In this document: piece by piece, positions 34,224-47,749 of the stretch
Position numbering within the stretch: the stretch's first letter is position 1
Layout: each line of letters starts with the position of its first letter
NCBI RefSeq assembly: GCF_036321535.1
Contig: NC_087453.1
Span: 27,900,001-27,964,000 of the forward strand
Length of the DNA stretch: 64,000 bases
Source: Camelus dromedarius
Taxonomy: Eukaryota
Direction: 5' to 3'
The notes under the pieces: model-generated
Databases searched by the model: none
What the model was told of the DNA's origin: nothing
The model's input: only the letters and a program-made list of their open reading frames with translations
Made by a program: the position numbers and the translations under genes

Positions 34224-35688
34224 GGTTTTTTTAAACTTATCTTGCTCACTTTTCTGAACTAAATATTTTCATACCAAGGTTTGCACTTTGTAAATCCCCA
34301 TTCTCACAGTATTACCTTGTCCCAGTACCAAAGTCTCTTATTTTCCTGCAGGAGAATTAAGAAGAAATCTATATAATTAACTTAAAAAACTACATGTAAA
34401 TTCTAATGTAGGCTCTTGAGGTTTTGCATGAAATCTTCTTTTGACTAACAGGTAAAATTTGGATTAACTTCATATGATATTATTAGTATCCTTGTTTTAA
34501 TTATAGATAAACCTAATGTGGAACTCATCTCTGAGACCTTCAGGTAAATATAAACATCTATAACATGGAAATTCAGACTCTGCAGATCCAATTAAGAATA
34601 TTACAAAATAAAATTATAACCAAGCTATAACCCAACAGAATCCAATTAAATCTTAAAATCAATACCTAGAAAATGTTAGATTTTATATTTTACAAGCAGT
34701 TCCAGAACAAGAAAAGAAACTTTTTCTATAGAAATATTATTTCATAGAAGGACTATTTGGTGGAAAAAGAAAAGTTTTCTTATTCAAACAAGTTTTTAAA
34801 ATCCCTGATATAAACAAGGTTGGCACAGATTACAGATTCACGGTCGGTAAGGCTGTGACCAACACTCACCCCTCCCCTAAAATGACCAACCTACTTATTT
34901 TCTTGGAGCATTTTAAGAACCAGTATTCCTGAGAAATGCCAGTCTAAATTCAAATAAAGAGAATTCAAACGTTTGGAATGTTTGGAGCATCCAAAGGAAC
35001 TGTAAAAATTAAATACACAGTATCAAAACTGATCACTTCAGCAATTTATTATTATGTCTATTTCTCTGCTCATTAGTGCTTTGTTGACTATCAAGACACC
35101 CAGAAGGAAAAATAAAATTGGATCATTGAGAGAAATATGTGCACAGAATGAGTTGATTTTTAATTATGATGGTCATTTTCTAGGGTTTGGGGTAGATTTG
35201 GCAGTACATCAAGTAGTGATTATGTTTTAAATTACTGTTTTTCCTTGAAGAATCTACCCTTGTGACTCAAAACAAGATTCTCTCAGGACTGAACAGTGTG
35301 CATTCATTTCAACCTACACTTTGTCAGCCTGTCATAAATCTTCTCTTACTCCAAACCGTTGGGGAGATAATGACTCCATATATTCAGGAAAAGCAAAGTG
35401 GCATATCTCTGAATAATTAACATTTTTATTCAGCTTGGGAAATAAAACATTAGATTTGAGGTTTTAGTTCTCTCTCTGATGAATTAAACTGATTATTCAA
35501 CTCTTCTCCTCAGGTGTGTGTTCTTGGCTGCAAAAAAAGTTCTAAAAATGGTAGAGTTTTACCCTTTTGCCCTCATCCGTCATCCACTATGACCCCAGGC
35601 TTGGTGTCACTCCCTTCCTTCCCATTTCTTGTACTCATTTAGTCCTTAGCACATGCAACCTCTTATAATTTATTTTTCTTTTAAAGCA

Positions 35689-36231
35689 TACACAGACCTA
35701 TGGAAGTTGGGGATTAGGTAGAAAGGAAAGAAGTTAAGCTTAGCAAATAAAGAGGCCAAGTTTAAATTTGCCTTTAACTAAATTAACTCTTCTAAGCCTT
35801 AATTTCTTCCTTTGTAAAATGAAAGTAGGTTGAAACAGCCAGGATATTTGGGGCTATACATGAGAGGATCCTCTTACTGAATGGCTGAAACATTAAAGAA
35901 CTGATTATCTCACACAGTACGAAGTCCAGAACCAGAGCTGTTACAGGTTGATTAAATCAGGATCCATTGATGCCATCAGAGACCCAGATGCTTTCCATCT
36001 TTTTGCTCTTCTTGTGGTTCCAAGGTGACTGTGCACCCTGAGCATTGCCTCCCTAAGAGATAAGATCCACCATGTGGCACAGGGAGGGTCCCTGTCTTGT
36101 GGCCCTTTGCTTGAGTGAGCTTTCTCCTACCCCATCCAGTAGACTTTCCTTTACACCCCATTGGATGTTGGCCAGAGTTACACCACAGCCTACACAGACC
36201 TATGGAAGTTGGGGATTAGGTAGAAAGGAAA
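35689..36231 (+). repeat. Perfect 41-bp direct repeat pair (35689-35729 and 36191-36231)
   Basis: tacacagacctatggaagttggggattaggtagaaaggaaa occurs identically twice, 502 bp apart. Confidence 0.97.
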
Positions 36232-45639: not shown

Positions 45640-45795
45640 GACCGCCAGGGTTAGACGAGCCTCCTCCTTATAAGAAGATGGAGATGATATGGTGCTTACC
45701 TCCTGGGGGTGCTCAGTGACCCTACGTAACATACAGACATCACCTAGAATAATGAGTAGCATGCAGTGAGTGCTCAATAAATGTTAGCTACTGAC
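45640..45795 (+). mobile_element. MIR 3' half
   Basis: aagatggagatgatatggtgcttacctc...gcatgcagtgagtgctcaataaatgttagctact. Confidence 0.75.
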
Positions 45796-45905
45796 ATCAT
45801 AATTGAAATGTTTAGAGCCACACTTTAGCTTTCTTTCTATAAAGATAATGCTAGTGGTATATATGCAAGGATTTATTAAGTCAGCAGGAGGTGGAGGTTG
45901 AATGA

Positions 45906-47330
45906 AGTCATTTGTGAGACTGCCATGGTGGAAGCTGTGGGTGCCACCCAGACACAAGCCCTGGCATCCACTTCACCTCCAGGAAGAGACCAGGAGCACA
46001 ATCCATGTGGCAAATGAAACACAGCCCAGCCTTGGGAAGAAGCCCAGTGGGAGCTGAGAAGGGTGTAACCGGTGATCTTAGAGGCTTCATTGCAATTGTG
46101 AGGTCCTAAATCAAGTGCCCAAGACCAGAAGCACACAGCGTCAGAGGCCGGAAAAAGGGAGAAGAAGGAGACACGAGTCAGGAAGGTCCAGGATCCCCAG
46201 GACCCAGTCCAGGACACAGCATTCCTGCTGTGGGAAGAGAGAACCCCACCCAGAGAGTGAGGAAGACAGGTGGGAGCATGAGCTCCCTACAAGCACCAGA
46301 AAAACACAGACATTTCATTGGCCAAAGATAGAGAGACAGGCCCATGGGTTCTCACTCAGCTCCAGGCCTGATTTTCATTGGCCCAAATACTGATGGGGCG
46401 TCTGCAACCAGCCTTCTTTATTAAAGGCAGTTGGAGCAGTTTGCAAACAGTCAAAGTTACCGAAGACCAACTATACTATCTTTTACATTTACATTTGAGA
46501 GACGTTTTCTAGACCTTGATTGGAAATTTTGGCCGTGCAAGTGTTGAAGTTAATGAGTATGGAATCGACATTCAAATTTCTGTAACAGATTACATTTCCC
46601 TTCGGTTACAGTCGAGTTTTAAGATTTGCTTAAGCCAATGATCAGACAAGTCCAGGGGCTGACAACCCATGTTCTTCAGGCCACGTTCAGCCTGTCACTT
46701 GCTTCTGTAAATTCAGTTTTGTTGGCACATAGACACATCAGTGTGTTTACATATTATCTGTGGTTGCTTTGGGCTACAAAGGCAGAGTTGAATAGTTGTC
46801 ACAGAAACCATACAGCCAGCAAAGCCTAAAATACTTACTTACTTTATGGAAAAACTGTGCTAACTCTTTTTTTTTTCAAATCTCTTTTTTTTCAAATTGA
46901 AGTATAGTCAGTTACAGTGTGTCAATTTCCAGTGTCCAGCACAATGTCCCAGTCATGCATATACATACATATAGTCATTTTCATATTCTTTTTCATTAAA
47001 GGTTATTACAAATTTTTGAATATAGTTCCCTGTGCTATACAAAAAGGACTTGCTTTTTAAATCTGTTTTTATTATATAGTGGCTAACATTTGCAAATCTC
47101 AAACTCTCAAATTTATCCCTTCCCACCCCTTTTCCCCAGTAACCATAAGATTGTTCACTATGTCTGTGAGTCTGTTTCTGTTTTGTAGATGAGTTCATTA
47201 GTGTCCTCTTTTTTTTCTTTTTTTAGATTTAGATTTCTTTTTTTTAGATTTTTTTTAGATTGAAGTGGATGCCAGGGGTTGTGTCTGGGTGGCACCCACA
47301 GCTTCCACCAAGGCAGTCTCACAAATGACT
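45906..47330. repeat. 70-bp inverted repeat pair (45906-45975 and 47261-47330), 68/70 identical
   Basis: The reverse complement of 45906-45975 equals 47261-47330 except at 45958/47278 and 45925/47311. The ORF track echoes it (DARACVWVAPTASTMAVSQMT vs DARGCVWVAPTASTKAVSQMT). Confidence 0.97.
46653..46867 (+). mobile_element. MER58A (hAT-Charlie MITE)
   Basis: caggggctgacaa...gtaaattcagttttgttggcacatag...ggcagagttgaatagttgtcacagaaaccatacagccagcaaagcctaaaata. Confidence 0.88.
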
Positions 47331-47665
47331 AAAAAGAGGACATTAGTGTCCTCTTTTTTTCTTTTTTCAGATATCATATGGTATTTTTCTTTCTCATTCT
47401 GGCTTACTTCACTTAGACTGATGATCTCTAGGCCCATCCAAATTGCTGCAAATGGCATTATTTTATTCTTTTTTATGGCTGAGTAATATTTCATTGTATA
47501 ACTATGCCACAACTTCTTTACCCAGCCATCTGTTGATGGACATTTAGGTTGCTTCCATGTCTTGGCTATTGTAAATAGTGCTGCTATGAACATTGCGGGG
47601 GCATGGATCTTTTCAAATAAGAGTTCCCTCCAGATACATGCCCAGGGATGGGATTGCTGGATCAT
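46869..47665 (-). mobile_element. 5'-truncated camelid-type L1, antisense, inserted at the MER58A right end and carrying an internal complex insertion
   Basis: aattgaagtatagtcagttacagtgtgtcaatttcc...ataagagttccctccagatacatgccc; TSD tgtgct(a/g)act at 46856-46865 and 47666-47675; ORF2 C-terminal text AMFIAALFTIAKTWKQPKCPSTD. Confidence 0.93.
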
Positions 47666-47749
47666 TGTGCTGACTTCTTAAAGAGTCAATAGAGGAATAA
47701 ATGGGAACACAACTAGATAAATTGTGTTTCTCTTCTATTAATGATTTTA

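What the first reader, a model, noticed from the sequence alone, without database searches (positions are those of the whole stretch)
47196..47375. Multi-step templated-insertion scar inside a young L1: slippage, 70-bp inverted copy from 1.3 kb upstream, fold-back and restart
Seen in the sequence, in order, after L1 text cattagtgtcctctttttttt (47196-47216): four stuttered ttagat units (47223-47260); 70 bp equal to the reverse complement of 45906-45975 (68/70); aaaaagaggaca (47331-47342), the reverse complement of tgtcctcttttt at 47202-47213; then a second cattagtgtcctcttttttt (47341-47360), after which the L1 resumes at gatatcatatgg. The fold-back forms a 12-bp stem with a 4-nt loop against 47347-47358. 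Junctions share 1-2 nt microhomologies (t, ct, ca). Against my recollection of the L1 consensus, about 15 nt (tccacatatgagt...) are missing. The template is centred on a 13-bp quasi-palindrome (tgggtg-c-caccca, 45938-45950). Established: serial microhomology-primed copying of nearby sequence is the hallmark of polymerase-theta end joining and FoSTeS/MMBIR. Inference: this is a germline repair event with at least 4 template switches, preserved in an intron. The two mismatches suggest it is real and not brand new.
Basis: partly seen in the sequence, partly recalled or inferred. Interest (0 to 1): 0.72.

Follow-up and report, generated by a model that had tools for sequence, protein, structure and literature searches.

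The report
Multi-template repair scar inside an L1
A 155-base patchwork of copied nearby sequence, including a 70-base inverted copy of DNA 1.3 kb away, replaces 16 bases near the end of an old jumping-gene fragment; it is a real, inherited scar of error-prone DNA synthesis at a break, and a clear example of a mutation type that is already well described.

Summary
In a 5'-truncated, antisense L1 (46869-47665), about 16 nt of L1 text are replaced by 155 nt. These are three extra imperfect T(n)AGATT units (47230-47260), a 70-nt inverted copy (68/70) of 45906-45975, a 12-nt inverted copy of nearby L1 text, and a 32-nt direct re-copy of 47196-47228.

The 70-mer occurs nowhere else in the window. 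Its template lies in non-L1 flank 894 nt beyond the L1's poly(A) end, so the event happened at this locus. Words specific to the scar are held by public runs from 10 studies and five organism labels. It is therefore not an assembly chimera, and it is inherited and not brand new.

- The C/D junction has no microhomology.
- The first TTAGAT is the L1's own.
- The quasi-palindrome is at chance level.
- "Young L1" and "intron" are unverified.
- Two mismatches do not date the event.

Sequence alone cannot separate pol-theta-type end joining, which I favour, from replicative template switching (MMBIR/FoSTeS). It also cannot exclude template jumping during the L1's own integration. This is a new member of a known kind, of low to moderate interest.

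The parts
45906..45975 (+). Template of the 70-nt inverted insertion. It is intact, lies in non-L1 flank 894 nt beyond the L1 poly(A) junction, and contains the chance-level 6+1+6 palindrome at 45938-45950.
   Evidence: only two copies in the window; palindrome frequency.
46869..47665 (-). 5'-truncated L1 insert: ORF2 C-terminal end, 3'UTR and poly(A), which reads as poly(T) on the + strand. It is 797 nt now and about 658 nt without the scar.
   Evidence: minus-strand translation of 47375-47665 matches human ORF2p residues 1194-1267 of 1275, E 2.5e-25; alignment to two other L1 copies; poly(T) at 46867-46876 and 46885-46892.
46856..46868 (.). Left target-site duplication, TGTGCTAACTCTT.
   Evidence: read directly. 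It matches 47666-47679 apart from one substitution and one 1-nt indel. The inferred empty site...TCTT/AAAG, resembles the L1 endonuclease site.
47666..47679 (.). Right target-site duplication, TGTGCTGACTTCTT.
47196..47229 (+). Segment A: L1 text CATTAGTGTCCTC-T8-C-T7-AGATT, contiguous with the L1 to its left. It is the source of segments B, D and E.
47230..47260 (+). Segment B: stutter of three extra imperfect reiterations of the T(n)AGATT motif, reading TAGATT / TC-T8-AGAT / T7-AGAT.
   Evidence: (family D1).
47261..47330 (+). Segment C: 70-nt inverted copy of 45906-45975, 68/70. Its first T can also be read as the last T of AGATT, a 1-nt overlap.
   Evidence: (I1).
47331..47342 (+). Segment D: AAAAAGAGGACA, an inverted copy of 47202-47213 (equally of 47347-47358). 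No overlap with C; a CA overlap with E.
   Evidence: (I8).
47341..47372 (+). Segment E: direct re-copy of 47196-47228, with T8>T7 and T7>T6C.
   Evidence: 33 nt, 94%; D3.
47373..47381 (+). Segment F: the L1 resumes at ATCATATGG. 16 nt present in the two other L1 copies are absent at the 47372/47373 junction. GAT is shared at the junction when copy B is the guide.

Best explanation
The scar is a complex insertion-deletion (+155/-16 nt) formed at this locus in the germline, probably after the L1 had inserted. A break or stalled 3' end arose in the long T-rich tract at the end of L1 ORF2. It was repaired by short bursts of DNA synthesis on nearby templates, in the manner of alternative (polymerase-theta-type) end joining.

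Inferred sequence of steps:
1. 5' resection left the top strand single-stranded for more than 1.3 kb to the left of the break.
2. Its 3' end (...T7AGATT) slipped and re-primed three times on the T(n)AGATT motif, giving segment B.
3. The end folded back on its own strand and, primed by a single T:A pair at 45975, copied 70 nt. This gives the inverted segment C.
4. The other end annealed at GAT, losing 16 nt, and copied 32 nt of the left flank in trans, giving segment E. It then snapped back on itself through TG/CA with a 4-nt loop and added 10 nt, giving segment D and the 12-bp hairpin.
5. The two extended ends were joined without microhomology at 47330/47331.

Shown directly: the segments, their templates and orientations, the junction overlaps, the in-situ origin, and the presence in many individuals. 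Inferred: the break, the order of steps, resection, and the polymerase. The scar has no evident function.
For: - Segment map and templates.
- The 70-mer and the hairpin are each the only one of their class in 64 kb, and they sit next to each other.
- The template is unique in the window and lies outside the L1, so the event is local and was not inherited from a source L1.
- The mix matches known pol-theta behaviour. Direct copies of the opposite flank, reverse-complement copies of the same flank, reiterated priming, 0-3-nt overlaps and a small deletion correspond to its three reported modes: snap-back in cis, copying in trans, and non-templated extension (PMC4912351). They also match the genomic scars described in PMC5068794, with single-nucleotide priming, reiterated priming and about 1 error per 30 nt.
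- The inverted orientation, together with a template on the 5' side of the same strand, is the geometry expected for fold-back on a resected tail (PMC11724301; PMC5068794 S7 legend).
- Inheritance: of 14 sampled scar words, 4 runs hold all, one holds 13, and 15 hold 7-8, across organisms A-E and 10 studies. 149 of the 151 possible words are unique to the scar.
Against: - A 70-nt insert copied from 1,285 nt away is far outside the usual pol-theta range. Most inserts are <25 bp, and about 85% are primed within 10 bp of the break (PMC5068794).
- The fold-back is primed by only 1 nt, and the C/D junction has no overlap.
- Nothing in the sequence identifies the polymerase or proves a two-ended break.
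- The two-ended scheme is one of several that fit.
- It is unproven that the scar is younger than the L1. Divergence in the scar (3 substitutions and 1 indel in 114 nt) and in the TSDs (1 substitution and 1 indel in 13 nt) cannot be told apart statistically.
- No reads could be laid.
Confidence: 0.45

Rival explanations
1. Replicative template switching (FoSTeS/MMBIR). A nascent strand stalled in the T-tract, or a one-ended break, disengaged and re-primed serially on nearby single-stranded templates at the fork. The steps were slippage, an inverted 70 nt from 1.3 kb away, an inverted 12 nt, and then a return 32 nt behind the departure point with a 16-nt skip.
For: - A single growing 3' end explains the 5'-to-3' order A-B-C-D-E-F without needing two ends.
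- Inverted copies of nearby sequence with little microhomology define MMBIR-type templated insertions. About 100 germline events of >=25 bp per person, some using up to five templates, are reported in PMC8421209.
- A kilobase template distance and tens of nucleotides copied fit this class better than typical pol-theta scars.
- The long T-tract is a plausible stall site.
Against: - The near-break direct copy of the opposite flank, the small deletion at a 3-nt microhomology and the 4-nt-loop snap-back are textbook end-joining features (PMC4912351, PMC5068794).
- No copy-number change or larger rearrangement accompanies the scar.
- The sequence cannot show whether a fork was involved.
Confidence: 0.27
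2. The scar formed during the L1's own integration. The top strand of the L1 is the first-strand cDNA and was synthesised in exactly the order A-B-C-D-E-F.

After about 360 nt the cDNA 3' end left the L1 RNA and stuttered. It then folded back on the target's own top strand, which 5' hyper-resection had exposed, and copied 70 nt. It folded back on itself for 12 nt. Finally it re-annealed to the L1 RNA 32 nt upstream through CA, skipped 16 nt at GAT, and carried on to the 5' truncation point.
For: - The direction of cDNA synthesis equals the order of the segments, and the template lies on the strand covalently continuous with the cDNA, 894 nt from the nick.
- Experimental L1 insertions show template-switching RT, self-annealing of the cDNA end after kilobase-scale resection, and templated insertions (PMC11702581).
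- The same L1 also has an 18-nt tandem repeat spanning the target/poly(T)/L1 3' junction: 46864-46881 and 46882-46897, CTC-T10-CAAAT / CTC-T8-CAAAT. This could be another leave-and-return step.
- TSD and scar divergences are statistically indistinguishable.
Against: - It needs the polymerase to return to an RNA segment already copied and hybridised.
- The alterations reported at L1 insertions lie at the junctions, not 360 nt inside the element.
- The junction tandem repeat is equally explained by later slippage.
- No polyadenylated or RNA-derived piece is present in the scar.
Confidence: 0.2
3. Artefact or coincidence. Either the assembly is a chimera across the L1, or the 70-mer is a dispersed repeat that landed here independently.
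For: No repeat library or whole-genome search was available.
Against: - Scar-specific words are held at 1.00 by four runs of one study, at 0.93 by a run of another study, and at 0.50-0.57 by 15 more runs, across five organism labels.
- The chance that 8 of 14 sampled words avoid every junction is about 0.01.
- The 70-mer has only these two copies in 64 kb, at 97% identity. A 70-nt repeat fragment flanked by copies of the host L1's own text is not how transposons insert.
- No tRNA or Rfam family was found at the template.
Confidence: 0.03

Closest known systems
Polymerase-theta-mediated end-joining scars (templated 'delins'; snap-back and trans synthesis): PMC4912351, PMC5068794
   Same: A small deletion plus an insertion built from copies of the flanks in both orientations, reiterated priming, 0-3-nt junction overlaps, mismatches and homopolymer slippage in the copied tracts, and a hairpin with a 4-nt loop created de novo.
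   Different: The 70-nt tract and the 1.3-kb template distance are far beyond the usual <25 bp and <10 bp. The total insert of 155 nt is large. Polymerase dependence is unknown.
MMBIR/FoSTeS templated insertions (germline MMB-TIs): PMC8421209, PMC2621351
   Same: An inverted copy of a nearby template, multiple templates in one event (up to five reported), minimal microhomology, found as inherited variants without a larger rearrangement.
   Different: The published detector defines templates as within 100 bp; here the main template is 1,285 nt away. One junction has no microhomology. A direct re-copy of the flank with a small deletion is more typical of end joining.
Short-range template-switch mutations in primate genomes: PMC5453318, PMC7954356
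   Same: Switch-and-return copying of the opposite strand creates a new perfect inverted repeat, here the 12-bp stem.
   Different: Those events replace sequence over tens of bases with one switch and return. This scar has several templates and a kilobase jump.
Fold-back (inverted) insertions at DSBs in yeast: PMC11724301
   Same: [quoted passage not shown]
   Different: The yeast events are about 5-34 bp and lie adjacent to the break, and they depend on Pol delta. Here the loop is 1.3 kb and the copied tract 70 nt.
Non-canonical L1 integration products (template-switching RT, cDNA self-annealing after hyper-resection): PMC11702581
   Same: The same strand geometry: cDNA end and resected target on one strand. 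Templated insertions are associated with an L1.
   Different: The reported alterations are at insertion junctions or join different RNAs. Here both L1 halves have the same orientation and are almost contiguous, and the scar is internal.

Membership tests
Pol-theta (TMEJ) templated insertion | Insert traceable to sequence flanking the break, in direct and/or reverse-complement orientation | tested here: met
   Segments B, D and E are copies of 47196-47229. Segment C is a reverse-complement copy of the same strand 1.3 kb away.
Pol-theta (TMEJ) templated insertion | At least 1 nt of identity at priming and junction sites | tested here: inconclusive
   B/C 1 nt (T), C/D 0 nt, D/E 2 nt (CA), E/F 1-3 nt (T or GAT, depending on the guide copy).
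Pol-theta (TMEJ) templated insertion | Short inserts (<25 bp) templated within about 10 bp of the break (typical range, PMC5068794) | tested here: not met
   C is 70 nt with 1,285 nt between the template and its copy (I1). D and E are within range.
Pol-theta (TMEJ) templated insertion | Dependence on POLQ | not testable with these tools
   Needs genetics.
MMBIR/FoSTeS templated insertion | Inverted copy of a nearby template with microhomology at the switch points | tested here: inconclusive
   Inverted copies are present (C, D). Microhomology is 1 nt at the C entry and 0 nt at the C exit.
MMBIR/FoSTeS templated insertion | Template within 100 bp (operational definition of MMBSearch, PMC8421209) | tested here: not met
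   1,285 nt for C. Met for D, whose templates are 4 nt and 117 nt away.
MMBIR/FoSTeS templated insertion | Origin at a collapsed or stalled replication fork | not testable with these tools
   A fixed allele keeps no record of this.
LINE-1 insertion (the host element) | ORF2p homology | tested here: met
   E 2.5e-25 to human ORF2p residues 1194-1267. Pfam gave no family for the 136-aa ORF.
LINE-1 insertion (the host element) | Poly(A) tail, target-site duplication, endonuclease-like target | tested here: met
   Poly(T) at 46867-46876, TSDs at 46856-46868 and 47666-47679, empty site ...TCTT/AAAG.
LINE-1 insertion (the host element) | 'Young' (low divergence from its subfamily) | tested here: inconclusive
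   No subfamily reference was available. It is 76-78% identical to two other copies over the ~250-350-nt stretch to the left of the scar. The TSDs differ at 2 of 14 positions. A 97-codon stretch is still open.
L1 twin priming / 5' inversion | The two L1 parts lie in opposite orientation | tested here: not met
   Both sides of the scar are antisense L1 and collinear.
Dispersed repeat inserted twice | Further copies of the 70-mer elsewhere | tested here: inconclusive
   None in the 64-kb window. The genome-wide count could not be run.

The most novel reading that the evidence does not exclude
The scar is a fossil of the L1's own integration. The first-strand cDNA end left the L1 RNA 360 nt into synthesis and folded back across a loop of about 1.3 kb onto target DNA that had been hyper-resected. 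It copied 70 nt there, snapped back once more, and then returned to the same RNA. That would be a germline-fixed record of the template-switching and self-annealing TPRT intermediates so far seen only in L1-overexpressing cell lines. A weaker version: whatever the trigger, it records at least 1.3 kb of resection and long-range cis fold-back priming in a mammalian germline.
Probability: 0.2. Interest if true: 0.45.

Novelty: new member of a known kind. Interest (0 to 1): 0.25.

Why it matters
The scar has no functional consequence that I can see. It sits at the very end of ORF2 and the 3'UTR of a dead, 5'-truncated L1.

Its value is as a specimen. It is an unusually legible, inherited example in which five kinds of step can be read in one 180-nt stretch: slippage, long-range inverted copying, snap-back, direct re-copying of the flank, and a microhomology deletion. 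The main template is a kilobase away rather than a few bases.

Such cases mark the upper range of template distance and tract length for templated-insertion mutagenesis in a mammalian germline. They also show that detectors limited to 100-bp search radii will miss events of this kind. If comparison with outgroups showed that the scar arose together with the L1, it would document messy target-primed reverse transcription in nature. Otherwise it is one more entry in a known catalogue.

Tried and rejected
- **Reads.** No depth, joints or per-run variants were obtained.
- **Contigs from other samples.** Exact look-up of three ORF products overlapping the scar or the template found nothing on record.
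- **Metagenome contigs.** A scan for the C/D/E junction 26-mer gave 0 matches.
- **Pfam.** No family for the 136-aa ORF. L1 identity was shown through PDB ORF2p instead.
- **tRNA and Rfam scans of 45800-47700.** Nothing beyond a chance-level miRNA match, E 0.99.
- **Earlier notes of this scan.** They contain only this same finding.
- **Quasi-palindrome at the template centre as a cause.** Rejected: 0.14 such palindromes are expected per 70 nt, and a 1-nt loop cannot fold.
- **Inverted pair I6 (45779-45792 / 47078-47091).** It shows the same 1,285-nt spacing but lies on a different anti-diagonal, 13/14 matches, so it is chance.
- **Dating from the two mismatches.** Rejected as weak. Three substitutions in 114 templated nt would give roughly 6-13 My if all arose after the event, but polymerase error could account for them (PMC5068794).

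Full report
**What is in the sequence.**

On the + strand, in order:

| Segment | Coordinates | Content |
|---|---|---|
| A | 47196-47229 | CATTAGTGTCCTC-T8-C-T7-AGATT |
| B | 47230-47260 | TAGATT / TC-T8-AGAT / T7-AGAT |
| C | 47261-47330 | Reverse complement of 45906-45975, 68/70; mismatches at 47278 and 47311, both transversions |
| D | 47331-47342 | AAAAAGAGGACA, reverse complement of 47202-47213 |
| E | 47341-47372 | Direct re-copy of 47196-47228, with T8>T7 and the last T of T7 changed to C (33 nt, 94%) |
| F | 47373 onward | ATCATATGG... |

TTAGAT starts at 47223, 47229, 47244 and 47255.

D and the start of E form a perfect 12-bp stem with a 4-nt loop. As single-stranded DNA it folds at -11.9 kcal/mol, z = -5.3 against shuffles.

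**More than chance.**

- In a self-comparison of the whole 64-kb window, C and its template are the only inverted pair of >=40 nt at >=95% identity.
- The D/E hairpin is the only perfect stem of >=11 bp with a 3-10-nt loop.
- These two one-in-64-kb features lie next to each other. They are flanked by copies of the adjacent 34 nt.
- The BLAST E-value for the 70-mer pair is 5e-29.

**What the host sequence is.**

- The minus-strand translation of 47375-47665 matches human LINE-1 ORF2p residues 1194-1267 of 1275, E 2.5e-25. The element is therefore an antisense L1, and the scar sits at the very end of ORF2.
- Poly(T), which is the L1 poly(A), lies at 46867-46876. The L1 text ends at about 47665.
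- The flanks TGTGCTAACTCTT (46856-46868) and TGTGCTGACTTCTT (47666-47679) are target-site duplications. They differ by one substitution and one 1-nt indel. The implied empty site reads ...TCTT/AAAG.
- The insert is thus a 5'-truncated L1 of about 658 nt, now 797 nt.
- Two other L1 fragments in the window read straight through the site. They carry 16 nt between AGAT and ATCATATGG that the focal copy lacks. They also show that TTTTTAGATT(T/C)C is L1 text. So the first TTAGAT is the L1's own, and the net change is +155/-16 nt.
- The T-tract C-T8-C-T7 is longer than in those two copies and is present in both A and E. It was therefore already there when E was copied.

**The event happened here.**

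- The template 45906-45975 lies 894 nt beyond the L1's poly(A) junction, in sequence with no L1 similarity.
- It has no other copy in the window and no tRNA or Rfam match.
- A scar that copies flank specific to this locus cannot have been inherited from a source L1.

**Real and inherited.**

I worked beside those places afterwards and sent none of their letters to any search.

Indirect evidence comes from the run index:

- Of the 151 possible 31-mers of 47205-47385, 149 occur once in the window. All but two of the 40 that lie wholly inside C cover one of the two mismatch positions. The words are therefore specific to the scar.
- Of the 14 sampled words, four runs of one study hold all. One run of another study (organism B) holds 13. 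Fifteen further runs hold 7 or 8. Together they span organism labels A to E and 10 studies.
- Eight of 14 words cannot plausibly all be junction-free: hypergeometric P is about 0.01.
- A share near 0.6 is what is expected if every word that avoids the T-rich stutter is held (95/151). I therefore read the 0.50-0.57 shares as variation or poor assembly in the T runs, not as absence of the scar. This is an inference.
- The 2.1-kb stretch around the scar is held at 0.83-0.86 by 20 runs of organism A from 9 studies.
- An assembly chimera is thus very unlikely. An allele shared by five organism labels is germline and not recent.

**Junctions.**

| Junction | Overlap |
|---|---|
| B/C | One shared T (the last T of AGATT, or the first of C) |
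| C/D | None. The bases beyond the template (TCAT...) and before D's template (AAA) both disagree with what is observed.
| D/E | CA |
| E/F | GAT when copy B is the guide; T when copy A is the guide |

**How it most likely formed.**

Everything in the 155 nt is templated from within 1.4 kb, in both orientations. The tracts are of 6-70 nt and are joined with 0-3 nt of overlap, and 16 nt are deleted. That is the signature of repair synthesis that repeatedly primes, extends and dissociates.

I favour a two-ended break in or next to the T-tract, handled by alternative end joining:

1. The resected top strand stutters on T(n)AGATT.
2. It folds back on itself 1.3 kb upstream and is extended 70 nt.
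3. The other end anneals at GAT, copies 32 nt of the left flank, and snaps back through TG/CA with a 4-nt loop.
4. The ends are joined blunt at 47330/47331.

Each step has a described counterpart:

- Snap-back in cis, copying in trans and non-templated addition by pol theta (PMC4912351).
- Single-nucleotide priming, reiterated priming and about 1 error per 30 nt in templated inserts (PMC5068794).
- Fold-back insertions on resected tails (PMC11724301).

The inverted orientation, together with a template on the 5' side of the same strand, is exactly the geometry that fold-back on a resected tail predicts.

Against this reading, the 70-nt tract and the kilobase distance are well outside the usual pol-theta range of <25 bp, with 85% primed within 10 bp.

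**Rivals.**

- **Replicative template switching (MMBIR/FoSTeS).** It explains the same segments with a single growing end and accommodates the long tract and distance better. Inherited events of this kind are already catalogued: about 100 per person at >=25 bp, with up to five templates (PMC8421209). I cannot separate it from end joining on sequence alone.
- **Switching during integration.** The L1's top strand is the first-strand cDNA and was synthesised in the order A to F. It is covalently continuous with the strand that carries the template. Experimental L1 insertions show template-switching RT, and self-annealing of the cDNA end after kilobase resection (PMC11702581). The same L1 has an 18-nt tandem repeat across its 3' junction (46864-46881 / 46882-46897). 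That could be another leave-and-return step, or just later slippage. Divergence of the TSDs and of the scar cannot be told apart. Only an outgroup with the L1 but without the scar would settle this.

My odds are end joining 0.45, replicative switching 0.27, integration-time 0.2, artefact or coincidence 0.03, and the remainder for two or more separate events.

**What does not hold.**

- **The 13-bp quasi-palindrome** at the centre of the template is expected 0.14 times per 70 nt, and it cannot fold with a 1-nt loop.
- **The two mismatches** do not show age, because the copying itself may be that inaccurate. If all 3 substitutions in 114 templated nt arose after the event, the age would be roughly 6-13 My at 1-2.2e-9 per site per year. 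I treat this as an upper bound.
- **'Young L1' and 'intron'** were not verified.

**Comparison and verdict.**

This is a new instance of a known mutational class, the complex templated insertion-deletion. It works like pol-theta end joining or MMBIR, but it fails the typical size and distance criteria of the former. It also fails the 100-bp operational radius of the published MMBIR detector. It marks the long-range tail of those processes rather than a new process, and it has no apparent function. Interest is low to moderate.

Noticed in passing
window 46864-46897: An 18-nt imperfect tandem repeat spans the junction of target DNA, poly(T) and the L1 3' end: CTC-T10-CAAAT followed by CTC-T8-CAAAT. 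It is either later slippage or a leave-and-return step at the start of reverse transcription. It is the second irregularity in the same 800-nt L1.
   Followed up: partly
window 35685-35729 and 36187-36231: A 45-nt direct repeat (44/45 identical) lies 502 nt apart, with unrelated sequence between and around the copies. It is too long for an ordinary target-site duplication and may be another templated (direct) insertion or a remnant of a larger duplication.
   Followed up: partly
window 47209-47224 and 47354-47367: The focal L1's T-tract (T8-C-T7) is about 9-10 nt longer than in the two other L1 copies in the window. It is present in both the original and the re-copied segment, so it predates the event and may be the fragile or slippage-prone site that started it.
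   Followed up: partly
window 47255-47665, minus strand: The scar extends the L1 ORF2 reading frame. A 136-codon ORF runs from ORF2 C-terminal text through segments E, D and C. No Pfam family matched and no identical product is on record. This is almost certainly meaningless.
   Followed up: yes
It was not examined further and was left out of all later searches.
   Followed up: no
   Followed up: no
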